Shown: in pieces, positions 14,001 through 48,500 of the stretch
Numbering within the stretch: the stretch's first letter is position 1
Layout: each line of letters opens with the position of its first letter
Origin: Ascidiella aspersa
Lineage: Eukaryota
NCBI GenBank assembly: GCA_963924565.1
Contig: OZ004610.1
Span: forward strand, 15,934,001-15,998,000
Direction: 5' to 3'
Length of the DNA: 64,000 nucleotides
The notes under the pieces: model-generated
Databases searched by the model: none
The model's input: the letters and a program-made list of their open reading frames with translations, nothing else
Told to the model about the DNA's origin: nothing
Program-made: the position numbers and the translations under genes

Positions 14001-17000
14001 ATTTTTGAAAGAGTACACATACTGTACAACAGGGGTCAGCAAACTTTTTCTAGTCGCCGGTTAAAACCAAACTCAGAAAGGTCTCTGCGGCCGCACAAAA
14101 TTAATTATGTTATTAAAATGTTAGAACAACTGTTAATCAGGCGAGCTTCGGATATGTTTTTGCACTTAAAATCGTGTTTAGTTACTTTCAAGGAGGCAGT
14201 AAAGTGTTGGCGCAAAGCGGGACAAAAAGCGTTTGTTAGGTTCAAAATTCGAGTCCACACGTCGTTATTCATATTGAAAAGTGTAATAAAACCACTTTGA
14301 TAAAACGCGATAACGTTAATGGTTAATCTAGTTCAGTGTTTGTTAACATACTGTATTCCGGGCGCACCTGGCGAGCGCGATTTTTTCTGGGTATACCGGC
14401 ATTTCTTTCAAATTTCTTGGAAGTTTTTATTACATTTCCAAAATAAAAATTAAAAATGTATGTCCAATATTTTTGATGACGTTTTCTGTTTGTATGCGAC
14501 GGCACTTGGGGTCAGTCCTCCACAGCACAAGAAGCGCTAATCTAGTTCAAATGACAGCATCATAACGTAAACAAACCTGATGTATAAAGATCGTTAACGC
14601 AAAGCGCGAAAATTTTTCGCACTTACGTAGTTAAAATAGTCAAAAAGTATGAGAAATGGACTCGTGTCTAGTTTGTCAAAGGACAAATTACGGCCCACGG
14701 GCCGTAGGTTGTCGGCCCCTGCTGTACAACATATATGACTGTGCAAGCATTTAATTTCTTGTCATATCGCCACGGACCACCTGTGCAGTGGTCGCGGACC
14801 ACCAGTGGTCCGCGGACCACAGTTTGGGAAACCCTGCTTTATAACATTCTATTACCGGCTGATTTAATATATGATTGCTTTAATGCATGACTAATCTTGT
14901 AGATATGGCAACACATGTCTAATGCTTATGCTGCAAGACACCCTGTTAAGTTGCTGTTATTCCTGTGTTACCAGGTGTTAGCATTCGTTGTTATGCTCAC
15001 TCGGTATTAATTTTTTTGTTATATACTTATATCATTATACATATAAAATGTTTTATAGTAAATACTACTTTCAGACTTGGCGTTGGTAAAATGAAAGATA
15101 ATTTTATCACCTTAAACTTGAGTTCAGGCTCTATCACGTATCTGTAGAATCGTTTGATGGGCAACTCTGAAAGTTTCTCACGGCAGTTCATGTAGATCTT
15201 CACATTTGCTCCAAGTGCTTCATGGAGCACCTGAATATGACAAATCTTAACTAGAAAACACACGAGCTTCACAAAAGGCTGTAATGCAATTATAATTTTA
15301 ATTTTTAACGAACAATTAACCTGTAAACCACCGAAATTCGAAACAATAAAGGGTTAAATGTTAGGCAGAAAACCGCTATATATAACCTTTGGTGGTTGAG
15401 CATTGAATTGAAGATGAATAGAAAGAACGTGGCGCACATTACTGTTGCAAATTGATTCCCTTACCATAACAATGGGGATAATTTCCTGCGCCTTCTCACT
15501 GGCTGGGTCAACCACTAGGGTGATGTCGTAAGGTGAAGTTTCCGATTCCGTGCCCGCGATCTTTATGACGCTGTGCTGCTGTCGCAAGTTGGAAAGGTCA
15601 CGTCGCTCCAAGTCGGACTTCGGTTGCGAGGCAAGGTGACTGTTAAGCTTCATAATCAGGTCGCTTCCTGTTGACAATTGGTGAGAAATTGTTCAATGAC
15701 ATTTAGATACCATTATCGTTTTGTTGCTCGCGTTTTTTCTGCTTTTTTTCTTCGTGTGTTTTCCGTTTATTGTACAAGCGTTCAATGTCATTCACCCTGA
15801 CGAAGACGGCTTGCATAGGTTGCCGAAACGTTGGTCAAGAAATAAAATTACCAGAGGAGCTGTTTTTTTACTTTATATATTAGATACATTTAGTTGTTGG
15901 GACTGCCAACACTGAAGAAAACATAATGTTAAAGAGACAATTCTAAATTCGGGCCAATCAAAGGTTATTATTTTTTGTGGTAAGGCCTACCTTTTGCAAT
16001 ATAAACCCTCCAAAAAAGTTGGAGGTGATTGTGCATTGAGATTGCACGACAGATATCCTTATCTATATTTCATTGTAGTAGGTAGAAAAACAAATATTTC
16101 TTTAGTAGGCCTAATAAATAATTTGAGCAGCAATAAAACCTAATTTAACGACTTGATTCAACGTAACGTGTTATTTTTTTTGCAACCGGTGGATTTTATA
16201 GCTAATAATATTGATTAATCAATCAAGATATAGTCAGGTGCGACTGTCGCATCATTAATATTAAGTGTTCCCTGAATCAAATATTTCGTAACTGTTGTTA
16301 ACAAACTGTAACAACAACATTTTTTTCCTAATTTAAAAATATCAATTTTGTCCTCCATTCAGGTATTCGCAAATATTTGTAAGGTAATATAACATTTACT
16401 AAAATGTTGTGCTATCGTTGTCTTTTTTAACAGTTTATTTGATTTTTTACTTGCTATGTGGTTCATCATACGAATTGGGGTCGAATATGGACATCTATCG
16501 TTTGATTTAAGTTAAATACAACTGATAAAATTTTAAGAGAAGCGAAAACCTGTTTTATGACACGAAAAATCGTTTTTTAAAGAAGGCCGACTAAACCTGA
16601 CAAACAGTACTGCGCATTATTATCACCTTGTGGTGCTGTAAGTTCTTTCTTGAATGACTTGACAGCCGAATCGATGATTTTTGCTGCTGTCGAGTATATG
16701 AGAGACTCGATTAAGTGGAAGTCATCGGAGGCAAACTTCTCATCGGGCTCGAGAGGTCCGATCACCTGAAATGTATATGATTTAAAAAAATGAAATACGA
16801 TATGTGGTTGTAGCTTCATAACAGTGTCTTGTGTTTGGGTCGTTACAAAAGAGTATGAGAGTTCACATATTACGTGTAAAAAGTAATTGCTGAACTGTTA
16901 AAAGTTTGGACTGTACTTTGATATGTATGTATATTAGGGTTGTTCAAAAAAACACTTTTTTGTCAAATTTCAGTGGGGACCCCCTGGAATTGTTAGGTTG

Positions 17001-20000
17001 CGTCTAAAAACCCCACAAACCAAATCTGAGCACATTTGGTTCAGTATTGACCGTGCTACGTCAATTTGAAAATTCAGATTTGGGCTGAAATTTTGAAAAA
17101 TATGAATTGTCCTCCCCCTAAAAATTTTTTTTTTCTTTTTTTGCATTGCTTTGCAATTGAATAGCCATAAATAAACCTGTTTTGCAGTAAAAAAATGAGT
17201 AGTCATGGTACAAATGTCACATTTTCTGAATTTTCAAATTGACGTAGCACGGTCAATACTGAACCAAACGTGCTCAGATTTGGTTTGTGGGTTTTTTACA
17301 CACAACCTAACAATTCCAGGGGGTCCCCACTGAAATTTGACAAAAAAGTGTTTTTTGAACAACCCTAATCTATATGTTAACCACTTTGCACCTAAACTCA
17401 ATGTTTCCCATCTTACAGAATAGAGGGCCAACTTCAGATGTGCTGTAAAAGGAACATGCGGACATACCTTTCCGTTAGCAACCACCGCAGTTTGTCCGCG
17501 ACGAAGGCCAAGCACGGAAACTGACCAGTCCAGGTGAGCGGCCAATTGGGGCACGGCCACTTCCGGTTGCGTCATCAGTTTTTCGAAGGCGTTTTTATCC
17601 ATTCCGCCCACGAAATAATCCGAGAAGGTTTTTTCCCCAGTGACGATCTTGCGAGCATTTTCCTCTTTCATCTGAAAAAAAATTGGACATTCTTCGCTAG
17701 TTCAATAGGTTTTCCGTCGCGAAGTCACGTAAATCGGTTAAAAAGGGACGCTATTTAAGTATTATTTTATTATTAACTGATTTATCAAAGCCCCATTGTA
17801 TTTTTTGTGGAATGACTATATATTTTAGCCTAACTTCCACGTTCACCTATTCAAGGGGTTGTTAAACTCGGGTCGCGCCCCCAGAGCGGTGCAGCAAAGC
17901 ACGGGGCGCAAAAGGCTCACTGAGAAATAAACATTGTTCTAATTTCTTTAGTACACATTTTTTTAAACAAATCATTTTTTTTAACTATTTCCGTTGCTGA
18001 CACATATCATTTTATTCCAATCAGGCAATCACTTAATCTATTTTTGTCGGCAATATTATTTTTTTGTTTTTTATATATATATAGTTACAGTTCAGCAGGA
18101 TTCTCACCATACACATAGTGTTGTCAGGGGAAGTTCCAAAAGCCAACTTTTACCAGTAAAATGCGAAATGTAAAGGAAATCTTTGAACCCAAAGCCGTGT
18201 ATATTATGGCATATGTTGTGTTGTATGAAATCATATATTTTAGATTTGCAAAGAATGATAATTGTAACTTAATAACACACATATTTTGTTCTTTACATGC
18301 TGATATACATAATAACATTGACAAACTGACGTTTAAGAGAACCAATATCAAACAACTTTCGCATAACTAGTGAGTTTTACATTTAAGTGCCTCTTTGCAC
18401 AGTCTGTGCGATGTTCCTTTTTGTTTGAAAAACCCTGCATATTGCACATAATTATGGCTACAACACATTATATTCGATAAGTTGTTTCAAGGGGGCGCGG
18501 CCACATTCAAGATACCAGGACCTATAACTTAATTTTGGGAAAATAAACGAAACGCTAAACTCAAAGATCAATTTAAGAAGGGTGTGCACTGCGCAGAGTG
18601 CACTGTGCAAATTGATTGATTGATGCGAAAGCAAGACACATATAAAAAAGGCTTAACCTTCTATTGCTAACATTTTTATAACACAGCGTCAGTATAACCA
18701 TGATTAAGCATTTCAAACAAAAAACACACATGAAACATGATATTTACGTTTGACCTTTGCAGCTTCGCCTAAAACCACTTATTGTTATGTTTCTTAAATG
18801 CGGCGTATGACTATTAAATGAAACTATTTGTTTTTATGTGGTGTTTACAATTTAATAAATATTGCTTAAATAAACTTGTCTAAGACACAGTCCACTCTGG
18901 CTGCTTTATAAACTATTATAATATTCTGTATAAAATAATATTAGAGTCATAAAATAACAATCCTATCAGTGTAGTCCTTTAATAGACGACAGCCAAATGA
19001 ACATGATCAACTATCTACTGACCAGTTTGGTGATGAAGTTCCTGGCGTTGTTGGCGCTCTGTGTTGCCAACGCCACTTCATAAGCTCGCGCAAACATCGC
19101 GTTATTGACTCCGCTTTCCATCTTAAGGTTGTGAATAACCGCTAGTCGCGTGTGGCTGCTCGACTTCTATAAAATACAAGGGAAAAAGATTGAAGACTAT
19201 AAAGTACTGACGCATCCCTGAAAACGCATAGTGAAGTTTTCTTAAACGTTACGCAAATGCTAGGGTGCAATTACTAATTCAAGGCGTCACACATCAACAT
19301 AAATGAACTAAATGTAACTTGTCGAGACTTCAAAGTCACAATAAAAAATAATTGCAATTAAAGCTATACAACAAATTAAATTAACATTACACGCGTTACG
19401 CATTTCAAAAGACCCCTAATTGATTTATTATAAAGCAGTCGTGCTTACAACTTGTTTTAACGCGTTGTAAACAATCGCCCTTCCGTCTTCGCTCTCGACA
19501 TCTGCCACCAGCCACATCGTCACTGGCCGAATAAACTTGCTGCCGTCACTTTTTGAGATGTAACTACAAAAAAAAAGAAAAAAACTCTTTCCACCGTAAT
19601 TTACAATAACATTGCATATGTTGGGTATAGTGCGTTGTATGTTTCGTCTTGAACACTTTCAGGTAGAAAAATAATTAGATTAGATGAAATACTTTAAACA
19701 AGAGTGTGTATAACTAGGAAAGGAAAAATCTACTAGAATTTTCGTTGTTGAACAAAATGTAAGAATCCATTATGCTGGGTAGGCTCTCATAACTATTTGC
19801 AAAATCACGTCGTAACAGGTCCGTGTAAATTTTCTAGACTCGTGCTACAGCCGCTGAATATCATAAAAAAGGTGCAATTTGCAATATCATAAAAAAGTTT
19901 ACAACATGTTACAGCAAAAAAGCGAAAGCATTTTTGAAAAGCGATCAGCCTAAAACAAAAATCACTATTAAATTTTCCTCGTGTAGATAGTCTAGATCAG

Positions 20001-23000
20001 GGATGGCGAACCACTGACACGAAGTGACCCACCACTGCCTTCTCAATGACCCACTTGAGGTTCAAAAAATGTAATAAAATGTTAACAAATATTTAAGTGA
20101 CTAAACTTTTGTATTTGTAAATATGTCCAGTTTTAGACGTTTATGACTTCAGAAACGTTTATGACTTCACAAACCTTTAATGACGTTTTGTGTTTAGTAG
20201 CCAGTTTATACTTCATTTAGCACTGAGCACAGTTAAAAATAGTTGCTGGTGTTATCCTAACCTTTCAGGCAAGTCTAAATTAGACCTTTGACTGTAAATT
20301 ATTTTACAAGTAGTGAATATCATAAAAAAATATATCAACCGTCATTTCGAGAGCAATCACGATAATTTGTGCTCTATGAAAGAGAATGAAAAGTTTGAAG
20401 TGATTCAGAGAGTAGTAAAGCAACATAAACAGCAAACCAGTGGCTTTAAGAATATCTTCGGAAAACCACTTTCTGACGGTGCTTACGTAAAAGAAGCTTT
20501 CAAAATATGTTCAGAGATGCTATTTGAAGATTTTCCAAATAAAACTGCTATTCTCAAAAAATTGATCAGCTACCTGTGGCAAGAAACACAGTAAAGGATA
20601 GAATAATTGCGTTGAACGAAGATGTTACTGACCAGATGTTACTAGATTTAAGGAATGCAGGATTGTTCTCAATTTGTTTGGATGAGAGTACAGATGTTAC
20701 CTCATCTTCCCGTTTAGCAGTTATCGCAAGATTTCGAGCAGGAAATATAATGAAAGAAGATCTCATTAAACTAATGATATATCTGAGAAAACTAGAGGTC
20801 GATGTAATGACTGAACTAAAGAAATAATTTACTAAGCTAGGGATAGACATGCAAAATATTGTATCGATAACGACTGACAGCATGATTGGGAAACATATTG
20901 GATTTGTCCAGTTACTAAAACAGGAGTTGAAGCGCAGCTTTGTTGAGTTTCACTGCATCATACAAGCCCTTTGCGCTAAATCCCTGAAATCTCTTAAAAA
21001 CGTTATAACTGTTGTAACAAAAATATTGAACTATATTGCAGCTCATGTTCTTAATAAACGCCAGTTTCCAAATTTGTTGAACTCGTGTGATAGTGAATTT
21101 TTTTTCTGGATTACTTATGTACAATAATGTAAGGTGGTTGAGTTGTGTCAATGTATTAAGCCGATTTGTTGAGTTGTTGGAAGAAGTAACACTATTTTTA
21201 GCTGAAAAAAATCATAATTATCCCGAATTAAGAGAAACTATGTGGTTGACCGATTTGCATTTCTTTGCTGATTTTACAGTGCATAACAATATTTTAAATA
21301 CTAAATTGCAAGGTTGTGGAAACACTGCATTGTCGATGTTTGGGCATGTTAAAGCATTTGAAAAGAAACTCGCTGTCTTTTCTGCAGACCTTGAACAAGG
21401 TAAGCTGAAATATTTTCCACAGCTACAGAAGCACTTTGCCAGCACCGATTTAGCTCACGACCAAAAGAAAAATGCCCTCGACAAGTATGTTTTGCTGACG
21501 AAGCAGGCCAAAGATGTAATGTCAGAAAGATTTGCCCAGTTCCGAGAGCTAGATTCTACATTGCAGTTTATTCTTTCCCCACATACAATTCAATTTGAAA
21601 CTCTTGAATTGTCGAAGTTTGAATGGCTTCGTCTTTCCAACTTTGGAAATATGATAGACTTCCAAGAAAGTGCAATTTGGAAAAAAAATTTATAGATTTG
21701 AATTACCACCTACAAAAAACTGAAGGACAAAATGGATGGCAGCGAAGTTATTGCAATTGAACGCCGTGTGGAAAATATAATCCTCACAGAATGGAATTCC
21801 CTACCAAACTCGTTTGAAAACATGGCGAGTCATGTTTTCACACATGAATTTCACAAAATCGAGTACCAGAAATCGTCTCAGCTCAGATATAGTGCTGCAT
21901 GTGTTAAGTTGAAAACTACACATTACCAGCCTAGGATCACAAGATTTGCAGAGAAGATGCAGCAACAGGTTTCTCATTGATATCATTAAATCTGTGACCC
22001 ACTTTGCTTTTTTTCAGGATTAAGGTCTCGTCTATGACCCATTCACTTAAAAAGGTTCGCCATCCCTGGTCTAGACTCTGTCTAATCCAGTGTTTCTTAA
22101 TCAGGTGAATGGTTCACCCCAGGGTGAATAAAATTTTTGCAAGGGTGAACCAACCGATAGGGGTGAATAAGGGTGAACCGTCAAAAACGGATGATAGCTT
22201 GTGAAACAATCAAACAACCTAAGCAATTTTATGCTGTTATATATATATAGACAAGATAGTTTTACCATATCATGAGACAAGGGTGAATGAAATCTGGAGA
22301 TATATGCTAGGGGTGAACAAAACTAAAAAAGTTTAAAAAGCACTGGTCTAGTCTAAACCCTGATTGGAAATACTTACGACTGGCCAAGAAACTTTGCAAG
22401 AGTTGCAGTTTTATCAGTGGATGATAATTCGCTAAATTCCTTAGCTTTCCAATAAGTGGTTTCTACAAAAATATAAAATAAATTTAGAAATCCAGCTGTG
22501 ACAAAGCCGGTTGGCTTAGGATGTACATTTTTTAGTTTTAAGAATTAAATTGAAAAACTCTAGAAGATTTTACTGGCATATAAACCATTGCAAAAACAAT
22601 GCAACCTTTGATCGAAATAAAGAAATGGTGAACTCGGGGATAATTACTCATTTAGTGCAAGTTGTCATAGAGTATCCTAAAAAATCATGTCGTATATCGA
22701 GTGTTCACACCATTTCAAATTTTATAATTTCATACTAAATCCCGCAGAAGCGAGAAAATTAACGATTGAACCAAGTTGCCGACCTGGCTTAGCAAAGCCG
22801 AGAAAACTCAGGTAGTTGTCTTCGGCTTTGAGAATAATTTCGTTGAAGCGTGACACGACACCAGGTCGCGTCATCAAGTAGTCGAACACGTTCATTTTGT
22901 TGTCGATGTTTCCCATGTAAACCGCGCGCTGAATTCCCGACGTGGCATCTAAAATCTTTTCGATCACCACCTGAAAAAGAAGGGCTAATGTTGTTGAACC

Positions 23001-26000
23001 CTACCGAGTCGAGACTCCAGCCATTTTTCCCTCTGGGTTTCCTTGAGCGGTAGAATAGAACAAACGATAACCAATCCTAATCATGTCTAAAAAACAAATT
23101 TAGCCGCTATTGCCTTACAAGCAACGGACCCTTATCTCCGCCACAAATAAGTTAAAATCGTTTACCTTGTGTCATGCAAAGTATTAACTCGGGCCCTATC
23201 TCTACGCCGGCACCTGCTCCCCAGTGGAGACGAGTTGCCAAGAGGAATGGGCTCTCGACTAAAACACACTTTATTACGCCATTTCCGGCCTCCCTCTTAA
23301 GTAATGGGAAGAACCCCATTTTACTTTCCCGTATAAATTCACCATTGCTAGACAAAATTAAATTACATACAAGTATAGCCAAAATAGTACAAAAAAGCGA
23401 TTTTTTTGTAAAACAACTTTTGAAAGTGAAAGCTGTATTAAACGTCTCAGATTAAAATAGAAGCAATAGACTTGTGCTACTAAAGTGTTTACTTAATTGT
23501 AAACGCATGCAAAAAACTAAAATGGCAACATGCTTTTTTATTCTGTATACAATCAGGTCAGACCAAGGAGCATTGTATGTACAGATTTTTGCCTTATCAC
23601 GGCTTTCGTTGTAATATTTATGCTTATGTTAAGTAGTTCGAGTGATCTTTAAACAAGATTCAAACGCAGATTCTGTCTAACCAGTAAGGGGCCTAATAAA
23701 AAAAGATTTCTCTGTATTTTGGTTGGCAATGTTATTTAAACATCCTTGAATCGTACCTGTTCAAAGTTGTCAGGTGAAATGTCGTCTTCCGTTAGCAGCA
23801 TTCCATTTAGCAAAACGTTTACTTCGCCGGTCAACCCAGACCTGGCGTAAAACGCTTTGCCCAGTTTACGTTGTTCATCGTACTCTGAACTATAAACAAA
23901 GGGCCACATGTTTTGTTCTATACTTACGTTCAATATTAAAGTTGTATAAACTCCGTGGAGAAACACGATGCTAATGTTTTTTAGTACTATTTTCAAATTG
24001 TTTGGTAACAAATAGCATTCTTAATAGCCCAAGTGATTTTACAAAAATGAACCTTTCTTTAAAATATGTCATTTTCGGGGGCCTGTTTTTGTTTAGGTTT
24101 AACATCACATCTGGGGTCTCTCCTTATGTTTAAAATAGGGATTTTTGTAATGTAATTTTATACTCCAAAGTGTTTAAAATCACTTCATATCCAAGCAAAA
24201 TGGACAAAAGCATTCACGAACTTACTCTGGGCCGAAAATGTCATCGAGTTCCGCATCTTTAAACTTTTTTTTTAGTCTTTCTTTCACGTGTTCAACGGTG
24301 ATCACGTCATCTTCGCCCAGTGATTTAAATATCTGCCACAAGCGACAGACGTCTTTGTTTTGTCGATATATTTCACAGACTAAATATGAACTATACGAAA
24401 CAGAATAGCTGTCAATACATTCAGGCAGATTCTGTTATTCGAAAGGAAACTCCATATCTATAGCCGTCAAATAATAATTAACGTTATCCCGGTGCTACTC
24501 TGCTCTATTGTGTAAGTTTAAGTTTTTCTAAACTTAACCTTGATAACAATCAATTAAAAGTCAAAAATTTTGTGTGAATTTTTTTTTACTATTGAGCTAT
24601 TTTGGCGTAAACAAATATTGAGTTTAATAAAGGAAATAGACTTACCCCAGCAAAAAAGGAGAACGTTTTCTCAGAATCATCCAGCTCATCTTTAGCGTAG
24701 TTGTAAGCTCTCACCAGAGCAACTCCAGCATCTTTGTTGCCATCCACGTTGGGCGAGTCGTCAACCACCATCGAGAAACCTCAAAGTATCGACAAGCGTT
24801 TGAGATGTAAATGCAAACCCTGTTTGGCTTTGGTAAATATTATGTTTCGAAATTAACAAGGTGGCGTTTCTTGTATTAAAACAGGAGCAAAATTGCATTT
24901 TTCGTCAAAATGGTAAATGCTACATATGAGCAAATATGTTGATTTAATCAAAGACTCAAAAAACTAACACAAAATTGTAATGCAACGAAAATGTTGGAAA
25001 TAATTTAAATTAAATTTACGAAAAGAAAATACATTTGTTTGCAATAGAATGCACGAAAAATAGCCAGTTTGACTACCATAATGTTGGCATGCACTTTTAA
25101 AGCAATATGCCCCAAAAGCATGACTTTCTTAACAGTCTAAAAGTTTGCCGCCAAACGCCAGTTACCGATTCGGAGAGGCACGTCGTTCGCCCAAAAAATC
25201 TCGGCTGACTCAACGAGGTACTTCATGTCTTCGTGCGTGGGATCGCAAACGATTACCAGGTGAAACATGTTCTTCCTAATCCTTCGCAGGGTGCCGGGAA
25301 AGGCTGGCCTCAGCATCTCGTGCAGGTTGGAAGGCCAGCGCGAGTACTTCTCGTCGTTTTCCACGTCGTTCAGCCACTGTTCAACCGACAAATTATTGGT
25401 AAAAGTTTGAGGGACGCCCGAGCCCCCGACCATTGCGTTTTCGGCAAGTACGTATTATATATATATTAGGGGATATATTGGTCAAGACCGAATTGGGGGA
25501 TGGGGTAACCTTTAAAGGATAACATTACGTAAACGCAAAAATGGTTCATAATAAAAAAAACAATGAAATTTAAAGCCATTACGCAAATACTTTTTAGTGC
25601 ATTACCACATAAAAATAAAAATGGAATAACGGGTAATTACTTTTGATCATATTAAGAGAGTAATGCAATAAAGCAACATAACAAACTTTTACAATTTTTT
25701 TATATTTTACATGCGTCTCAAAAGTTCTCGGAAACAAGTGATCTATTAAGCATTAAAAAACTCGCTGCAAAATACGACGGTACTTTTTTAATGCCGTATT
25801 ACTATTGCTTGACGTGATACTTTTGCAACACAAAGGGATTTTAACAGTGAATAAAATCTGCAAAATATCCACACGTGGCACTTCATGTAGCCACCAGTCC
25901 AACTGCATTTGATTCACGCATAATAAAGATTAAGTGAAGGAATTCTAATCGCCAAGTAATTGGAAAGAAGACAAAATAATGCCTCGCTGAATGAACATAT

Positions 26001-29000
26001 TTTAAGTAAGTACTATGAATGTTGCACAACTGCGATCTACACTTCCCCCACTCCCGCCGCTACCCACATAATAAATATATAAGTTTAAACTAAAATTTCA
26101 TCAATTTTAACAAAAATTGTAGATTTTCACTCTAATGCCCCGGGGATATACGTTAAAAAATCTTAGTAAAAAACAAATGACAGTTTGATTCAGCCAACTC
26201 CTGTTTACAACTTTTATTTAAAATATTTTGAAAGAACCCCTTAGTAAACCAAACGCTCATGTCGGTATTTATGGTACACAAATTCAGTGATTTTTAACCA
26301 TTTAATCCAGTTGACATAAAATTGCTTTTTAAAGCTAAAATCCAACTTTAGAACCGAAGTTTGTTAAGCGTTATTTAGATCAGTAGACGAACAAATATAA
26401 CTTTTTTATATAACTTCTCCCGCAACGGCTCACCGAAATCATTCGCCTAATCAGGAATTCGGTGTAAAATTATAACTGCTCAGCTTATTAACTTTCAGCT
26501 TTTAAAACTCCCCCTGAGTGAAGAACGCTTTCCCAGCCCGTAACATCTCTAATAAGGAAGTAACCGGTGGCCAAGATAAAAAAGTAAAATTTCAATACCG
26601 GGCCCTTACCATAATGGACTTGTCGCGAATATCAAGCATGTAATTTTCAGGCACATCGTTTTGCAGATTGACCCGCATCATCTTCTGGATATCGTCGCTA
26701 TTTAAATCTAACTTTTTGAGTCCGTCAATCAGCCTACCCTCACTGTGTAACACGTCCAGGATCCTAGTGAAGCGAACAAAATAAAAGTTATCGGATGCGC
26801 TCATCAGCACTAGGCAATTTGTTATTAGCTTGGTAAATATTTTATGCGCCGTAATAAACTTGCAACACATTTTGTAACACTATTACTCAAGAAATCAGTT
26901 TACGTCTGGTTTGTTGTATTTCACCAGGGAACCAAAATAAATTCCGCAATTATGCGATTGCAAAACTCAATATAGAACAATGTGTAATTTTATAGTCTAA
27001 CACAGAGGTAGCCAACACGTTGGCCGTGATCGACCGGTCGATCGCCGCATTTTACCTGGTCGATCGCGTCCAATATGTGTTACGACATTACAGTAACTAT
27101 CGCACACAAGCGCAACATTAAAATGACCAATTGTTGTTTGTACAAGCCTAAGAAAGCGTTCTTTGACGTAACAAATTAACCTTCATCGCTGACTTGGAAT
27201 GCAATTAACGCTCAAAATGTTGTATAAGTGTTTTTGTGATTTTTACTGAACCAGTCGATCGCGAGTCCCTAAAAATATTTCAGTCGATCGCAATCAAACA
27301 TAAGTTGGCTACACCTGGTCTCACAAAAGAATAACGAGTCCCGTTTGACTTGTCCAATTACCTACTTTTGTGTTGGTATGCAAACAAATACAAACCTAAA
27401 TTTGAAACTACAGCCCAAATCGAAACAAAAAAATAACTCGGACAGCGTCTTTCACTACGTTACAATGACTAAGTAGGAATTTCCACAAAATGTTTGCTTA
27501 TTTTGCGAATCTGTCGTAGTTAGTGGAAACATTAGTTTGACTACCAAGTATACAATTCACCGCTTTAAGTACCCTTAAACCAGCTACAATCATTTTTCAT
27601 GGCACCTTTTCAACTTCTACCACTCACGAAAACAAGTTAAGGAAGTCGAGATTGACCGGGAGACGGTTTATGGAAAGGTAAGCGCTGCCGGGCCAAAGGC
27701 CATAGCGCATCTTCCACCGCTAGAGGTACATAAAAACATTACGATTTACACGCGTGCATAAAAATATGTATAACTATTATCTGCACCCATTTCATTGGCG
27801 GTCAAACGTATTTTACAACCGTCAGTAGTGATCCAGCTGTAATCAAATTATTTTTTTACAGAAAGGGTGCAGATAACAAGCTTGCTTACTTAAACATGTC
27901 AGAATCGGCAACATCAATTTGTAATCCGTTGAGCAGGAATAGTGAGTCACCAGCATCCAGTTCAAACCCCTGTAACCTCTGTAATGCCATATGTGTACTT
28001 ATGAGCACATTTTCTTGGTTTTTGAGACTTACAACTTTACAACAAAAAGACAGTTGCCAATTGCTGCAATGTTGCAGAATTGTGTTGTGTAAATTTTATA
28101 TTTGCAAGAGCATTTTTTTCAAAATTAACATGGAAAAGTTAGTAAACAAACAGTTAGAGTAGAAACCTGTTGGTTAATCTTAATTTCTCCCCGGATGTCA
28201 TCAGAGACTTGCTGCTTGACAAGGGACCTGAACAACATATTACAACATGTCAAATTGTAAATTATGTTATAAACCCTTTTTTAGGCATTTACTATATATA
28301 CACTATAAATTACCTGACTTTGATTGGAAAATTTAGACTGATATCTTTCAGCACTTTCATTTGCTCCTCAGGTGGAGATGAAAGAACTCTTGCAGCTGCC
28401 TAAACAACAAAATCGTGAAGCCAAAAATCATTACAGCTTTGCTCGGTTGCAATCGTATGGAACATTTTTTTTTGATAGAAATACAAAATAAGGCCAACAG
28501 AGAAAGGTTTATTACAGTGCCAAATGTACTAAAGAGTTACACATTTCTCAAATAATATATGCAAACACCACTTAAATCAATGGGATACCTTGAATAAACT
28601 TCAATGTGTCACTTTGCACATTGTTAAAGCATGTTGTTGACCTTATGATATGTAATTAACATAAGTGTGTAAGCAAAATCCTTGACGCAAAAAGAAAACC
28701 AACAGATTTAACAAAGTTTTAAAAAAACACAAAATATTTTTCCAAATTAAGGTTTTTTGAAAAACAAAGTTTTAGATGGGATAGGTGTTTGTAAACATAT
28801 AAAAGTTAAAATATGAAGCACTTTAACCTGAAAACTAAGATCCTGAAGTTGCCAAACTTTCATCGGAGCCATTTCATTGGTTGATTCGGTAAGGTGATTG
28901 CGGAATTTAGTCAACTGTTCCGAAAGATTAGGATGAAGTTTGCGTAACTTGGGAAAATCGAAACCTTCAATTTCAATGTCATCTTCATTCTCACTGGTGG

Positions 29001-36593: not shown

Positions 36594-39500
36594 TTACCAG
36601 ACTCTGCACGTGTGATCCGGAGCCATTGCGTCCACACCTCTTCTACAATTGAAGGCATTTTCAAACTCCTCGAAGTTTTGGGAAGGAACAACCACCCTAT
36701 GTTAAGACAAATTGGACATGCTGACAAACTATTAAGGTGTGTGATAGCTTAATCTTATGTAAAAGCCCATATTACTTTTGTGACTTTTGTTAAAATGAAT
36801 TTAAAATTGGTATAGTTCATTTCTTTCTGGATGTGACCTACCTGTATTCACCGGGGCTGTGACTATCAGTTGTCAACAGGCGAACTGCATATTCCTCTGT
36901 ATATTTACTGCACCACACCTTATAGAAAGTAACAATTTTTACAGTTCTGTAAGCAAGTTAATTTAGAAGACAAAGTGAATTGTTTCCCATCTAAATTAAA
37001 TTATTGTTCAGTTAAAAATATTACAAAATATGAAGTCACTTTGTCGGGAACTGTTCACCTGAGCGTAACCAATGAACAAAAGCTGATCTTGTGTAAATTT
37101 GCTTAAGCCTGGCAGTCTCAAATCCCCTTTCGGGTTTACTTCTTGCCATTTCTTGTAGGCCTGTGGAAAATGTATTAGATTATTTATTCCCAAATGATTT
37201 GTTATGGTTTTACCGACACTTTGACTTAACATTCGACGTTAAGCTATGTTTTAAGTTAAGGTTTTAGTTTTGGTGATATATGTCATCTCAAAATAAACTT
37301 ACTAAATAGGTTTGACGCAAACCACCATTGTCGGCAATGTTTTCCCCAAGTGTCAGTTCCCCATTAATCTGAAAATATAATTATTGGAAATTGTTACATG
37401 CTATTTATTAAAGGTTAGTATTCCTTAGCTTTGAATTCACGATATAATTTTGTTAATAAGGTGTGGTAAGGGAGCACAGGGCCACTGTCGCTTCCAGTTT
37501 TTGGCCTAATGCCTAGGTGCTTTACTGCGCGTTGTTCGTGTCGTTTACTTTTTTATAATCAAAAAATACATTCAAAATGTCACAGTCATCCTTTAATTAT
37601 ATATCAAACATCGTGTAAGCTGCTTTAAAAAAATACTTAGTTAACCCTTGCATGTGGGCACAGTTGTTATTCAAGGTTTTATAAATTTCTAGAGACCACA
37701 ATTCCGTATCAACTAGTTTTACCAATAAACTGTAATAAAAGCTAGCTCTGATTTGGAAAATGTGTGGATCAACCCAAATTTACAGTTTTGCCAACTGTTA
37801 TCAGAAGTGGGCAAATTCTTTTGGAGTATGGGTTGTAATAAACTGACAAATTTGTGGCCTCTTTATTTCTCACATGTTGATCACGTGCTTCTTCCCACGA
37901 TATGGCCGAGTATTGGTCGACCATACACTGCGACTTGTTCTTAAAGTTCTCTTTGGAAAAATCGGTCCACCAGTCGTTAAGATTTCCGGATCCGTCAAAC
38001 TGTGCCCCGGAATCGTCAAAGCCGTGTGTGATCTAAAAACATTGTGGAACCGGAACGTGCTTAAACGCAGTTTAAAAAAATACTATTTTGCTTATACGGA
38101 CAAAGTTTGCAATATTTAAATCGGAACAATTAACTGTCCGATTTAACCTAAATCGGTCAACATTTCGTTGCGAATTATAGGTTAAATAGGACACTATTTA
38201 AATCGGAAACTATATTTGTCTATTTAAATTTATTTGGAAAGACTTACATTCCGTTGTAAGTTTAACGCAAATGGTTTATAGGGCGTATCAAAGTTAGTAA
38301 ATTTCCTGTTATGATGTTTGAGCTATATTAAAACTGTTTTGTGTATAGGAACATGTTTGTTGCTGGGGTGTCACTATAAGTTTTTTTCTACTTTCCGTTT
38401 TTTTTTCTACTTTTCCGCAAGAAATAAAATTGGTATGTCTTACCGATGAGGAGACACCTAAATTCTGAGAAATGATACGAACACTATTATCACAATGTTA
38501 GGGCCATTAGATCGAAGAATACGCATTTGTTCTAGCTTAAAAATGGCAGATTACTGAAGTTTTGAGTAATAACGTCAATCATCAATTGAAAAAGGAGCCC
38601 ACGCCTGAACACAAACCAATTTTATTTGAACTCAAAGCAGAAATTAAATTTGACTAATTTTGATACGCCCTATAAACCACTATTTCTTTGTAATTTAGTT
38701 TAGGGCAGGGTTTCTCAACCGTGGCCCTCGGCCTGGGGGGCCACGGAGCGCTGATTGGGGGGTCACGGGCATAACCCTCTAGCTAGGTCGTAGTGTTGCA
38801 AAACTAACCTACCCAATTGTAATATTTTTCAAAATTTGCCAGTTTAATTCGAATCCAAATTGTAATCGAATCCGCTTCTGCCGTTTATATCGGGTAAGTG
38901 GAACCGATCAAATTTGTTCGTTTTATTGCGGAAAGTATATCCTATAGTCGTACACACGCGAGTTGCAAGATTAACACCGCCTATCGCTGTGGCGAAACAA
39001 TTATATCGTGCCGCTTCGTGTAGCTTAATAACGTGGCGTTAGTGTTTTTGCGGGCGACCAATAACTTTCTGATAACGGTCGCAGGTGCAGAGATTTCTCA
39101 GTTTTTTAAGATTTGTACCCACTTCTCAGCAAGAAGGCTGTCGTAATGTGCGTTTAATTCGCAACTTTGCGAAGCTAGACTTTATGATCTGGCGTGCAGT
39201 AAAACGAAATCCAGAAATCGTCTTTACGTATGTAATGACATTCGCTTGTCTTAATATAAAACAAAGCCGAATAAAGAAAATTGGAGAAATAGAAGAAAAA
39301 GCTTTGCAATAGTAAGTGCTTTTATTCGTTTAATAGCTATATTTATTGTTATCGAGGATTAGTACAGTAAGTGAAAACACATTAAATACAAGGCTAGTTT
39401 TTTAAAGCAAGGGGGCCACGAGGGTTTAGCGCTTTTCAAAGGGGGCCACGGAGCATAAAAGGTTGAGAACCACTAGTTAAGGGGGACATATAAACTTTTC

Positions 39501-45500: not shown

Positions 45501-48500
45501 TTGGAACCTATAGACATTTGCTTCGAGATGTACATTTACTTTCAATTTGTTGCCACCGGGTTAGTTTTTTGACGTAAAAACGCCACGCCTTTCAAACAAA
45601 CTAAATAAACTTACTTGGATATACTATGAAAAGTATTTACGCCTAGCTTAATTTACTTGATCTCCCTAAGGCAATACTATGTCGCTCCATACAACACGCA
45701 AAACTAATCCTTAGTGGCAACTGAATACTTATAATTTAGCCAACTGTTCAGATATAAGTATTTCTTGCTTTTTGGGGTCATTTTATTATACAAGCCTTAT
45801 AAAACCACAACATAGCGCTGTAAATTTCAAATATTGGCGAAAGAAATGAACCTTAAATTGATGGTTTGGAATCCTATGTGTGTTTTTGTTGTCAAAACGT
45901 TAAACATAATTAAACATCAAAAACACCTTTGAATAAAGCTAATTTAACCTGGCATGACATTACAAATATTTCGGAATTGTTTGTAGACAAGTAGACGAAA
46001 TAGGCCTGGTTAAACCTAAGTTAATTAACAAATTTTTTCAAAAATACATTTGCCAGAAGAGCTCTACAAACCTGATATTATGCCTGGTAGCAATAGCTTA
46101 TATACTAAGTTAATTAACTATAGGTATTGAATAATAAAATTCCGCAATAAAAACATTTGTATCAAGTTACATAATAAGCTTACCTGCAGTATGTTAGCCG
46201 TCGAAATCATATCGTCAGCGCTTACCCATGACGATATAATAGCGTATGTGCTAAATTTTGAACGGAAGTTGGCAAGGGTAGTTTCAAATTGAAAAGTTGC
46301 AGCATCGAAAGCATCCCCGACGACTGGCCAACCTCCAGCGTTAGCAATAATGTCTACGGCCGGATCTGCCCCACTACTGTCGATTTTTCCTGGTGGAAAT
46401 TATTTTGTAAATTTTATAACGAAAGTGGGGGAGTTTATGTAATATGGTCTTACCAGTATCAAGGCAAAGGTTGTAAAATGATTTTGCTTTCACTATTGAT
46501 TCTCTTTCGCCATCCTTTTCTGTTTCTAACACACCTGCACATAAAGGTTGACATACAACAACGTATTTTTTTTTCGGACTCCAGCCAAGACCAAAATAAG
46601 AACAATTTCAACGTCGGAATAAAACACACTTCGGAATAAGACCAAAAGAGCAATAATACCTAATAGTCGTAACACAAACAAATCGGATTAATACCTAAAC
46701 CCCTCGGAATTGCACCTATGGCCGAAATCAGGCCTCTCCAACATTTTAACTAAACCCAAACCTCACCCCTAAGTACATCATTAACTTTCCTAACAATTTC
46801 AACCCCAACCAATTTTTTAACCCACCCATTAACCACCAATAACCCCAAACAGCCCAAACAATCCGATGCCAAAACAACGGCGCCATTCAAACTAGGTCGC
46901 CCGAACGTTTACATCATAATGGCCGATGCTGCAGGCTCATGGTCCCTGATCGTCCCATACCCTCTATCTACAGTTTTAGGGGTTATTTTGGCCTTTTAGA
47001 CCTCATTCCGATGAATTTAGGACTTATTCTGACAGGTTTATGTCTTATTCAGACGATTAAGTTTTTATTCTGTCGTGGATATTATTGCGTACGGCTTTAT
47101 TATGTCCTTAGTTTTAATACTATAGTTTTATACATTTTTCTGCTGTTGGTATTTTTTAATTTGGTATGATTTTTATTATAACCATCAACGTTTTAATTAC
47201 ACATTCAGTGAATCTTTTTCTGGGCAATAGATGGAAGCCAGACGACAAGGCGAAAAGCGAACTTTAAAAACATTAAGCAGTTCTATTTCTTAAAGTTTAA
47301 AATTGAAGAGGTGTTACTTCAGTACAAATGCTACGTCATAAGGGAGCTATCGATAAGTGCAAATCAAGAAGTTTCTTTGTGCTTTTACGTAGTTAAAACA
47401 GGCAAAAAGTACAGTTTGTTCGGAGGGGGTGGATCCGCCCCAGTGTACAAACTGTGTTTTCTTTTTGTGCTGAAAGCCACAACGTTTGCTTTTTGATTTA
47501 CCTAATCGTTATTTTTATTTTTTTTAAATCTAATATGTAAACACGCTAGGCTTCAAGTATGCTCTATATTTCTAATATTGGTTAAACATTTACACATTAT
47601 TATTATCAAATGGGTCTATCTAAAGAAAATAATCCAACATTGTGTTGCTAGGCTCAATCAATACGTTACGTATTATAGCAATGGATTTCTTAGATGTAAC
47701 AAAAAGCAATTTCCCATGCATATAGTAAAACTATTTTTTTTCGTTTGAAAAAGATTAGGGGAAGTACGGGACCCATGGAACATGGGGACCAATGGAACAC
47801 TGGCATATTGCGCCCCCTGTTGGCAGAACGAAATAAATTTTTGGTTTGAGGGAATAATTTTGTGTACAGAACTTTGTCTAAAATGTTCTACAGCGTGCTT
47901 TTGGAAATGGTTGATTTATTCCATTTTTTTCACTTTTCCAGGTGAAAAATGTACTTTTTAGCTTGATCTTCGTAAGGTGTTTTGATAGTCTTTAGGCAAT
48001 TGTAAAGCAGTGAATATTTTTCTGTGGAGAGAGGGGACATTTAGGTACATGTTGAAAGTTAGTATGATTAATTTGGTTCAGAGTACTGGCTAGCCATGAG
48101 TGTTTTTATTAATAATGGCGATTAGAAGTCTGTTCCATTGGTTTCTCCATCATTTTGTGATCGTATCCTTAGATTTTAAGGATAGTAGTATGCCAACTTT
48201 TAAGACAAGAACATCTAATAAGGGGTTGTTCACTAAGGACCAGGGCTACGGAGTCGGACTCGGCACTCGAAGGAGTCGGACTCGGGACTCGAGTAAGACC
48301 ACGTAAAACTACCAGAGTCCCGAGTCCGACGTGCACATGCGCAGTACCAAAAACCGATATTGTCGTCAATTGCAGTTTGTTATAGCGGTATAAGATATGA
48401 TGGATGTTTTCAAATAATTTATTGTGACTGGATGACTTATATGACATCCCTATGAGTGGATTGCTAAATACCCACCGTATTTAGTTACATAAATTGGCGG

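What the first reader, a model, noticed from the sequence alone, without database searches (positions are those of the whole stretch)
27777..27876. 16-bp RNA stem between exons 9a and 9b as a candidate switch enforcing mutual exclusivity
Seen in sequence: the 170-nt intron between the two exons contains ttatctgcaccc(a)tttc (27777-27793) and gaaagggtgcagataa (27861-27876), a 16-bp inverted repeat with one bulge. It starts 13 nt after the 9a donor and loops out about 67 nt. Established: steric hindrance from a short 5' splice site to branch-point distance, and intronic RNA pairing, are known mechanisms of mutually exclusive splicing. Inference: folding shrinks the effective 9a-to-9b intron to about 70 nt and brings the donor to roughly 50 nt from a likely branch point. 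That could block 9a-9b joining or mask one site.
Basis: partly seen in the sequence, partly recalled or inferred. Interest (0 to 1): 0.75.

Follow-up and report, generated by a model that had tools for sequence, protein, structure and literature searches.

The report
Hairpin between two alternative UGGT exons
A strong RNA hairpin sits in the short intron between two alternative versions of one exon of the protein-folding sensor gene UGGT, and a related species has a differently spelled hairpin in the same place, so it may help the cell use only one version at a time, though this is not yet shown.

Summary
A 16-bp, one-bulge inverted repeat (27777-27793 / 27861-27876) lies in the 170-nt intron between minus-strand UGGT exons 9a and 9b. 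It dominates the predicted fold, with pair probabilities near 1.0. No dinucleotide shuffle of the intron matched it (0 of 1000). It is single-copy in the 308-Mb genome, whereas three other strong hairpins in the window are multi-copy repeats.

A related species (metagenome contigs L009-L011) keeps exon 9b in the same place and phase. Its 394-nt 9a-9b intron carries a sequence-unrelated 18-bp stem, 17 of 18 paired (0 of 1000 shuffles). It is the most exceptional stem among 13 introns there. Folding leaves 69 nt unpaired here and 79 nt in the relative.

Docking/selector-type pairings are at chance. RNA reads show exon 8 to 9a and 9a to exon 10 only; no read touches 9b, at low depth. Double inclusion or double skipping shifts the frame, so exclusivity does not need the stem.

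Weaknesses:
- There is no strand asymmetry.
- The relative's helix looks like a DNA palindrome.
- 79 nt is not shorter than a 77-nt intron in the same gene.

Verdict: the structure is real and recurs; its switch function is plausible but unproven.

The parts
28167..28227 (-). UGGT exon 8 (61 nt), the constitutive exon upstream of the pair
   Evidence: Reading frame and AG/GT sites. The RNA joint 28167|27978 is seen in 4 reads.
27890..27978 (-). Exon 9a (89 nt, starts in phase 0, ends 2 nt into a codon). This is the version seen in RNA.
   Evidence: joints exon 8 to 9a, 4 reads; 9a to exon 10, 5 reads. Scores 27.2 bits against a profile of 28 UGGT homologues. Matches Pfam Thioredoxin_13 positions 70-93, E 0.01.
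27720..27889 (-). The 170-nt GT..AG intron between 9a and 9b
27861..27876 (-). 5' arm of the RNA stem (intron positions +14 to +29)
   Evidence: pair probabilities 0.85-1.0.
27794..27860 (-). The 67-nt looped-out segment. It holds an inner 9-bp helix and a UACUGAC branch-site-like word. One polymorphism in run X2 (27838 T>A) lies here.
27777..27793 (-). 3' arm of the RNA stem with the one-base bulge. It ends 56 nt before the 9b acceptor AG.
27773..27775 (-). Weak 3-bp extension of the helix, pairing with 27879-27881
   Evidence: pair probabilities 0.43-0.83.
27628..27719 (-). Exon 9b (92 nt, same phase as 9a), a conserved paralogue of 9a. Not seen in the one RNA run.
   Evidence: Depth is 0 over it.
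26610..26763 (-). Exon 10 (154 nt), the common acceptor for 9a or 9b
   Evidence: The joint 27889|26764 is seen in 5 reads. Matches Pfam Thioredoxin_13 positions 94-127.

Best explanation
Shown: the helix is a real, single-copy structure that dominates the predicted fold. It lies in the intron separating two old, paralogous, same-phase exons (9a and 9b) of the ER folding-sensor gene UGGT. A related species has a sequence-unrelated helix at the same place in the same intron.

Inferred: the helix is kept, or insertions into this intron are tolerated only if they fold back on themselves, because it holds the effective length of the separating intron at about 70-80 nt. That leaves 13-20 nt after the 9a donor and 56-59 nt before the 9b acceptor. 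The 9a 5' splice site and the 9b branch point then lie at or under the roughly 50-60 nt that both spliceosome halves need. This disfavours joining 9a to 9b, so a transcript carries 9a or 9b. The frameshift caused by carrying both or neither, and the resulting decay, acts as a backstop.
For: Stem in the window:
- Real, and it dominates the ensemble.
- 0 of 1000 shuffles reach -28.1 kcal/mol.
- Unique in the genome, with positive controls for repeat detection.

Exon 9b is a conserved exon:
- The relative has it between 9a and exon 10, with AG|...|GTGAGT sites, 89 nt, same phase.
- Our 9b against the relative's 9b scores 47 in global alignment; 0 of 3000 shuffles reach that.
- The relative's 9b against our 9a scores 33; 0 of 3000 shuffles reach that.
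- 11 residues are identical between the two 9b versions, and 5 of them use different codons.
- Our 9b scores 9.5 bits against a UGGT profile that holds neither 9a nor 9b. Only 1 of 1560 window decoys and 1 of 2000 shuffles of 9b score higher.

Stem in the relative's 394-nt intron:
- 18 nt, 17 of 18 paired, starting 20 nt after the donor and ending 59 nt before the acceptor, plus a nested perfect 10-bp helix.
- Present in both the MFE and the centroid structure, with pair probabilities 0.8-1.0.
- 0 of 1000 shuffles reach it.

Intron controls:
- In the relative, of 13 introns only this one beats all 100 shuffles.
- In the window, of 14 introns, three do: this one and two whose hairpins are repeats.
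- Among the seven window introns under 400 nt, it is the only one.

Thresholds of about 50 nt (PMC7969005) and 60 nt (PMC13762713) were read in passages.
Against: - No RNA evidence that 9b is used. There are 0 reads over 27603-27876, against 5 joint reads for 9a to exon 10. Only about 6% of one run was read, so up to roughly 45% use of 9b is not excluded.
- Exclusivity at the protein level needs no stem. Reading 9b after 9a hits a stop at codon 17 (codon 16 in the relative). Skipping both exons gives a stop at codon 8 of exon 10.
- The relative's gene holds a plain intron of about 77 nt, so a folded 79 nt is not clearly unspliceable. The smallest inferred introns here are 86 and 92 nt, against 69 nt folded.
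- Branch points are not mapped.
- No strand asymmetry: sense -28.1 against antisense -25.3 here, and -66.4 against -66.6 in the relative. The relative's helix runs on for about 50 imperfect base pairs, as in a DNA palindrome or foldback element.
- Only one independent relative. L009-L011 are 99.0-99.3% identical to each other.
- Known intra-intron stems usually activate splicing by bringing splice sites together (review PMC11802352, passage read).
- The arms and 3' tails of the two species cannot be aligned, so there is no compensatory-change evidence.
Confidence: 0.4

Rival explanations
1. The hairpins are incidental. Each species independently acquired a small palindromic or foldback insertion, or carries a decayed single-copy MITE, in an intron that happens to lie between 9a and 9b. 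The helix has no role in splicing. Exclusivity rests on the incompatible frames, on decay of misjoined transcripts, and on protein factors.
For: - The hairpins differ in sequence and size (100 nt against 315 nt).
- There is no G-U strand asymmetry, and the relative has a symmetric imperfect helix of about 50 bp.
- Three of the seven strong hairpins in this window are transposon-like repeats, two of them inside UGGT introns.
- Two other strong hairpins in the window are also single-copy, so unique hairpins occur about once per 16-21 kb.
- The frames alone give a stop on double inclusion.
Against: - The hairpin is single-copy in a 308-Mb genome, yet its arms are still perfect.
- The same orthologous intron carries the most exceptional stem of 13 introns in the relative. 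That is about 1 in 13 by rank, or an estimated 2-5% from the hairpin density in L009.
- The unpaired remainder is nearly the same in both species: 69 and 79 nt.
- The relative's intron has no match in this genome and no second copy in about 18 kb of the relative's own sequence.
Confidence: 0.33
2. The stem is functional but works the other way or on exon choice. By looping out most of the intron it brings the 9b acceptor close to 9a and exon 8. Alternatively it hides a cryptic branch site and AG (the UACUGAC in the loop and the ..UGCAG in the 3' arm). Either way it tunes how often 9b is chosen, or it drives a regulated, unproductive 9a+9b product.
For: - Intra-intron pairings that bring splice signals together are described as activating in 14-3-3, MHC, SF1, DNM1, PLP1 and ATE1 (review PMC11802352, passage read).
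- The folded intron is about the size of normal short introns in these genes (77-92 nt).
- The loop holds a strong branch-like word about 37 nt upstream of an AG that lies in the 3' arm.
Against: - No 9a-9b joint read was seen (low depth; decay could hide such reads).
- The cryptic-site motif is not shared with the relative.
- No competing pairings exceed chance. All six intron-by-intron comparisons lie within their 200 shuffles.
Confidence: 0.17
3. Exon 9b is not a used exon but a dead duplicate. In that case there is nothing for the stem to regulate.
For: - 0 reads over 9b.
- 9b has Arg (Glu in the relative) where 27 of 28 homologues have the Gly of the N-G-[LMIK] motif; the other has D-G.
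- No Pfam match at E up to 0.1.
- 9a against 9b within the window is only weakly similar: 277 of 2000 local shuffles and 113 of 2000 global shuffles reach the observed score, and 18 of 3000.
- Neither exon finds the other in the own-genome protein search.
Against: - The open frame, both splice sites, the length class (2 mod 3) and a shared W.KMR..PG...N.L....NLF pattern are kept in a species whose introns cannot be aligned and whose exon 10 is only 47% identical.
- 5 of the 11 conserved residues use different codons.
Confidence: 0.1

Closest known systems
Steric-hindrance mutually exclusive exons (OGDH exons 4a/4b with distant branch points, PMC7969005, passages read; alpha-tropomyosin exons 2/3, recalled)
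   Same: Two alternative exons are separated by an intron in which the upstream donor and the downstream branch point are too close (under about 50 nt) to be used together. Intron size is under constraint, and insertions disturb the pattern.
   Different: Here the linear donor-to-branch distance is about 130-150 nt (about 370 nt in the relative). It falls to the threshold only if the helix forms. No distant branch point was shown, and no branch point is mapped.
Competing docking-site/selector RNA structures (Dscam exon 6, 14-3-3 xi, MHC; cited in PMC5740500 and PMC11802352, passages read)
   Same: Intronic base pairing inside a cluster of mutually exclusive exons. The sequence is poorly conserved while the pairing is kept.
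   Different: There is one helix with both arms inside the separating intron. Nothing competes with it. Pairings between the three flanking introns are at chance in both species (80-185 of 200 shuffles do as well).
Dscam exon 17: steric hindrance combined with RNA secondary structures (Yue et al. 2013, RNA Biol; seen only as a reference-list entry; full text not held)
   Same: A two-exon cluster for which both steric hindrance and intron RNA structure are invoked.
   Different: As I recall it, the hindrance there comes from linear proximity, and the structures mask or approximate splice sites. I could not read the paper, so this comparison is unverified.
Intron-bridging stems that shorten the donor-to-branch distance and help splicing (yeast introns, recalled; SF1, PLP1 and ATE1 per PMC11802352)
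   Same: The same architecture: a helix near the two ends of an intron that loops out its middle.
   Different: Those stems promote removal of the intron that holds them. The reading preferred here is the opposite effect, because the remainder is at the lower size limit.
MITE or foldback transposon insertion
   Same: Terminal inverted repeats around an unrelated core of 100-315 nt, lying in an intron. Other introns of this gene hold such elements.
   Different: Single copy in the genome, with no family. No informative target-site duplication is present; the flanking TA is part of the palindrome.

Membership tests
Mutually exclusive exon pair (criteria of Pillmann 2011 / Hatje 2017, PMC5740500 passages) | Neighbouring internal exons of similar length, translated in the same frame | tested here: met
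   Lengths are 89 and 92 nt here and 89 and 89 nt in the relative. All start in phase 0 and end 2 nt into a codon, with GT-AG sites.
Mutually exclusive exon pair (criteria of Pillmann 2011 / Hatje 2017, PMC5740500 passages) | Sequence similarity between the two exons | tested here: met
   Weak within the window (277 of 2000 local and 113 of 2000 global shuffles reach the score; 18 of 3000). Clear through the relative: its 9b against our 9a gives 0 of 3000, and its own 9a against 9b gives 0 of 3000. The profile score for 9b is 9.5 bits.
Mutually exclusive exon pair (criteria of Pillmann 2011 / Hatje 2017, PMC5740500 passages) | Transcripts that carry one exon or the other, never both | tested here: inconclusive
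   Only exon 8 to 9a (4 reads) and 9a to exon 10 (5 reads) were seen. There are 0 reads on 9b. One RNA run, about 6% of it read.
Steric-hindrance splicing | Donor-to-branch-point distance under about 50-60 nt in the separating intron | tested here: inconclusive
   By linear distance this is not met (170-nt and 394-nt introns). Folded, the range is 34-51 nt here and 44-61 nt in the relative, assuming the branch point lies 18-35 nt before the acceptor. This range is my own arithmetic from the stem positions. Branch points are not mapped.
Docking-site/selector competing structures | One docking sequence able to pair with a selector next to each alternative exon | tested here: not met
   Best pairings between the introns 8-9a, 9a-9b and 9b-10 lie within the shuffle range in both species.
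Transposon terminal inverted repeats (MITE) | Many copies of the element or of its arms in the genome | tested here: not met
   The element matches only itself. The arm occurs 5 times against 3 for the control. The same tool finds at least 128, 40 and 40 copies for three other hairpins. The relative's genome could not be searched; there is no second copy in about 18 kb and no match in this genome.
Curated RNA families (Rfam 15) | A match to a covariance model over the hairpin | tested here: not met
   No match overlaps 27777-27876 at E up to 10.
UGGT (UDP-glucose:glycoprotein glucosyltransferase) gene | UGGT-type thioredoxin-like domains in the exons | tested here: met
   Exon 11 matches Thioredoxin_14 at E 3e-29. 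Exons 9a and 10 match Thioredoxin_13 positions 70-127. Another exon matches Thioredoxin_15. The full-length homologue P0003 carries all UGGT domains.

The most novel reading that the evidence does not exclude
Steric exclusion made by folding. The intron between two mutually exclusive exons must stay functionally short, so over evolution it accepts only insertions that zip themselves up into a helix. The helix, whatever its sequence, is what keeps the 9a donor and the 9b branch point too close to be used together. This would be a rule for exon pairs in this lineage rather than a one-off. A first-stage note, s1-794476, reports another stem inside an intron separating mutually exclusive exons elsewhere in this genome; I did not check it. 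It would also give UGGT, the sensor of misfolded glycoproteins in the ER, two sensor-domain versions from one gene.
Probability: 0.25. Interest if true: 0.75.

Novelty: new variant of a known kind. Interest (0 to 1): 0.58.

Why it matters
Two mechanisms specific to mutually exclusive splicing are recognised: introns that are too short, and competing RNA pairings. A helix that makes a long intron behave as a too-short one would link the two. It would also explain how such introns can grow without breaking the switch.

The idea is directly testable, because two natural versions with unrelated sequences exist.

Separately, a conserved alternative exon in the second thioredoxin-like domain of UGGT would mean one gene can make two misfold sensors. 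Vertebrates have two UGGT genes (recalled). I found no paper describing mutually exclusive exons in UGGT (6 papers hold both terms, 4 were listed, none on this by title or abstract).

Tried and rejected
- Known RNA family: an Rfam scan of 27000-28500 at E up to 10 gave 5 chance-level matches, none on the hairpin. A snoRNA or pre-miRNA reading was dropped: the loop is 67 nt and I saw no C/D boxes on reading the sequence.
- Repeat family: rejected (with controls 57-59).
- Docking/selector or exon-looping pairings: the pairs that the repeat finder hinted at (pair I1; one search pairs I6 and I7) do not exceed shuffles.
- Palindromic symmetry of the inner part of the hairpins: not significant.
- Homology of the arms or 3' tails between species: none. 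Only the first 13-20 nt after the donor are alike (5 of 2000 shuffles), partly because of the donor consensus.
- Solved structures with the 30-aa exon peptides: 0 hits each.
- Own-genome protein search with 9a and 9b: each found only itself, and no second UGGT copy.
- More relatives: the viral contig collection gave none. Prokaryote genome contigs gave two GC-rich fragments (L013, L014), and the metagenome scan gave L012. These share only a short motif and hold no 9a or 9b, so I dropped them.
- Two closer relatives are known only as protein pieces, P0001 (76% identity) and P0002 (72%).
- Polymorphism: run X2 differs at 27838 (in the loop) and 27592, with nothing in the arms. At about 0.3% divergence that carries no information. 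In the relative, one C/T difference in the nested helix keeps a G-U pair. This is an anecdote only.
- Intron sizes in ascidians: a paper search found nothing usable. That the genome is a sea squirt's rests on earlier notes of the scan and was not checked here.
Full report
WHAT IS THERE

The window's minus strand carries a UGGT gene. Exon translations match the UGGT-type thioredoxin-like Pfam domains: exon 11 matches Thioredoxin_14 at E 3e-29, and exons 9a and 10 match Thioredoxin_13 positions 70-127. Exons were searched one at a time, and I made no joined model.

From the sequence and from RNA joints, the local structure is:
- exon 8: 28227-28167
- intron of 188 nt
- exon 9a: 27978-27890 (89 nt)
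- intron: 27889-27720 (170 nt)
- exon 9b: 27719-27628 (92 nt)
- intron of 864 nt
- exon 10: 26763-26610

On the RNA, the 5' arm is 27876-27861 and the 3' arm is 27793-27777. There are 16 pairs with one bulged base and a 67-nt loop. The stem starts at intron position +14 and ends 56 nt before the acceptor.

IS IT MORE THAN CHANCE?

The stem appears in the MFE and centroid folds of the intron, with pair probabilities of 0.85-1.0. Its duplex energy is -28.1 kcal/mol. No dinucleotide shuffle of the intron reaches that (0 of 1000; mean -7.3, minimum -22.8).

Real DNA is richer in hairpins than shuffled DNA. The window holds 2 perfect stems of at least 12 bp with short loops, against 0.81 expected. 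It holds seven loci with a stem at least this strong and a loop up to 400 nt.
- Three of these loci are multi-copy repeats (16.9-17.4 kb, 48.3 kb and 14.8 kb; at least 128, 40 and 40 matches).
- Two are single-copy.
- One was not tested.
- Ours is single-copy, and its arm 16-mer occurs 5 times with up to 1 mismatch, against 3 for the control.

Empirically, a single-copy hairpin of this strength falls in a given 170-nt stretch with a probability of roughly 1%. Rfam has nothing on it.

IS 9b A REAL EXON?

Within the window the case is thin.
- 9a and 9b are barely similar. 277 of 2000 local shuffles and 113 of 2000 global shuffles match the observed score. Under another scoring scheme, 18 of 3000 do.
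- There is no DNA similarity between them.
- Neither exon finds the other in the genome search.
- 9b has no Pfam match.
- 9b has Arg where 27 of 28 UGGT homologues have the Gly of the N-G-[LMIK] motif; the other has D-G.
- The single RNA run shows 4 reads joining exon 8 to 9a, 5 reads joining 9a to exon 10, and depth 0 over 27603-27876. Only about 6% of the run was read.

Against that, a profile built from the matching segment of 28 homologues, holding neither 9a nor 9b, scores 9b at 9.5 bits. The alignment is end to end. One of 1560 open frames in the window and 1 of 2000 shuffles of 9b score higher.

The decisive evidence came from a relative. Scanning metagenome contigs with the exon 11 peptide gave three contigs, L009-L011, with 86% identity in that exon. 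They are 99.0-99.3% identical to each other, so they count as one species.
- In L009, exons 7, 8, 9a, 10 and 11 lie in order.
- Between 9a (4945-5033) and exon 10 (from 5859) lies an open 89-nt exon, 5428-5516.
- It has an AG acceptor, a GTGAGT donor and the same phase.
- Its peptide aligns with our 9b: score 47, 0 of 3000 shuffles.
- Its peptide also aligns with 9a: score 33 against ours and 30 against its own, 0 of 3000 shuffles each.
- 11 residues are identical between the two 9b versions, and 5 of them use different codons.

The introns of the two species cannot be aligned, and exon 10 is only 47% identical. Keeping this frame, these splice sites and this peptide pattern therefore points to selection on a translated exon.

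Reading 9b after 9a gives a stop at codon 17 (codon 16 in the relative). Skipping both exons gives a stop at codon 8 of exon 10. The two exons can therefore only be used productively one at a time.

THE STEM IN THE RELATIVE

The relative's 9a-9b intron is 394 nt (5034-5427) and shares no sequence with ours. Even so, it holds an 18-nt inverted repeat with 17 of 18 positions paired, at 5054-5071 and 5351-5368. It begins 20 nt after the donor and ends 59 nt before the acceptor. A nested perfect 10-bp helix lies inside it.
- It is in the MFE and centroid folds, with pair probabilities 0.8-1.0.
- 0 of 1000 shuffles of that intron reach its -32.2 kcal/mol.
- It is the second strongest hairpin in the 16.7-kb contig.

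I compared approximate introns of the same gene.
- In the relative, of 13 introns only this one beats all 100 shuffles. The next best is beaten by 1 of 100.
- In the window, of 14 introns, this one and two whose hairpins are repeats beat all 100 shuffles. A fourth is beaten by 1 of 100.
- Among the seven window introns under 400 nt, it is the only one.

As an independent replicate, this is worth about 1 in 13 by rank, or an estimated 2-5% from hairpin density. That is suggestive rather than overwhelming, and it rests on one species.

After folding, the unpaired remainder is 13 + 56 = 69 nt here and 20 + 59 = 79 nt in the relative.

WHAT THE STEM IS NOT

It is not part of a docking/selector system. 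The best pairings among the three introns around 9a and 9b are ordinary in both species (80 to 185 of 200 shuffles do as well).

HOW IT MIGHT WORK

Linear distances rule out simple steric hindrance, because the introns are 170 and 394 nt. If the helix forms, and the branch point lies the usual 18-35 nt before the acceptor, the donor-to-branch path is about 34-51 nt here and 44-61 nt in the relative. The branch point should lie in that tail, because the AG-free zone before each acceptor starts 2-15 nt after the 3' arm (my reading).

These distances straddle the thresholds used in the field: about 50 nt (PMC7969005, passages) and 60 nt (PMC13762713, passages). The same OGDH paper argues that the intron between such exons is size-restricted and that insertions disturb the pattern.

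That suggests the reading I prefer. The intron must stay functionally short, and only insertions that fold back on themselves are tolerated. This would explain two helices of unrelated sequence and different size with nearly the same unpaired remainder.

WHY I HOLD THIS AT ONLY ABOUT 0.4

- No read shows 9b in use.
- The frames already make joint inclusion unproductive. Hatje et al. report that 20 of the 28 human-Drosophila orthologous genes with validated mutually exclusive exons (71%) have such incompatible frames (PMC5740500, passage).
- The relative splices a plain intron of about 77 nt in the same gene, so 79 nt is not clearly too short. Here the smallest inferred introns are 86 and 92 nt, against 69 nt folded.
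- The helices are as stable on the antisense strand as on the sense strand, and the relative's helix runs on for about 50 imperfect pairs, like a DNA palindrome.
- There is no compensatory-change evidence, because nothing aligns.
- Published intra-intron stems mostly help splicing (PMC11802352, passage).

The main rival, incidental foldback insertions, gets 0.33. A functional stem with another effect gets 0.17. A dead 9b gets 0.10.

COMPARISON AND NOVELTY

The closest known systems are steric-hindrance exon pairs and competing RNA structures. This would be a variant that joins the two.

My searches found no description of folding-made steric exclusion. In one search, 2 papers hold all five terms, and neither describes it in the abstracts or passages I saw. 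My searches found no description of alternative exons in UGGT either. The Dscam exon 17 paper that combines both ideas is not held, so I know it only from reference lists and from memory.

Earlier notes of this scan flagged the same exon pair (s1-790835). They also flagged another stem in an intron separating mutually exclusive exons elsewhere in this genome (s1-794476). I could not locate or test the second note.

Noticed in passing
window 27055-27328: A very high-copy repeat lies in the 9b-exon 10 intron. Summed contig depth is about 16,000-22,000, against 50-100 beside it, in both DNA runs. Many variant contigs and loose ends pile up at 27240, 27271 and 27316-27319. RNA reads from both strands also accumulate there.
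   Followed up: no
window 16940-17370: A foldback-like element of about 430 nt with long, near-perfect inverted arms (duplex down to -55 kcal/mol) lies in a UGGT intron. It has at least 128 matches genome-wide at 86-97% identity, often as head-to-head pairs.
   Followed up: partly
window 14765-14830 and 48250-48340: Two short hairpin elements (66 and 91 nt) each belong to abundant repeat families. At least 40 matches were scored for each, out of 270 and 1999 candidates. They are probably MITE-like.
   Followed up: partly
window 52570-52645 and 54935-55065: Two further strong hairpins (-28.2 and -28.3 kcal/mol) are single-copy in the genome. Their setting was not examined.
   Followed up: partly
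window 38279-38679: A strong inverted repeat (-36.9 kcal/mol, arms about 400 nt apart) lies in the neighbouring minus-strand gene region. Its copy number was not tested.
   Followed up: no
window 25440-25690 and 26233-26500: Low RNA depth (0.5-3x) falls upstream of the part of exon 11 that aligns to homologues, and in the exon 10-11 intron. All 4 reads at 25463-25469 differ from the assembly (A>G and a 2-nt deletion). Exon 11 may start further upstream than the homology suggests, or these reads may be unspliced RNA.
   Followed up: no
L009 5141 (alignment A1 column 202): One of only two differences among the three relative contigs in this region is a C/T change in the nested 10-bp helix. It turns a G-C pair into a G-U pair, so pairing is kept.
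   Followed up: partly
L013, L014: Two contigs filed under bacterial genome bins (Burkholderiales and Desulfobulbaceae MAGs) encode a short UGGT-like [10 protein letters not shown] motif. They may be eukaryotic contamination of those bins.
   Followed up: no
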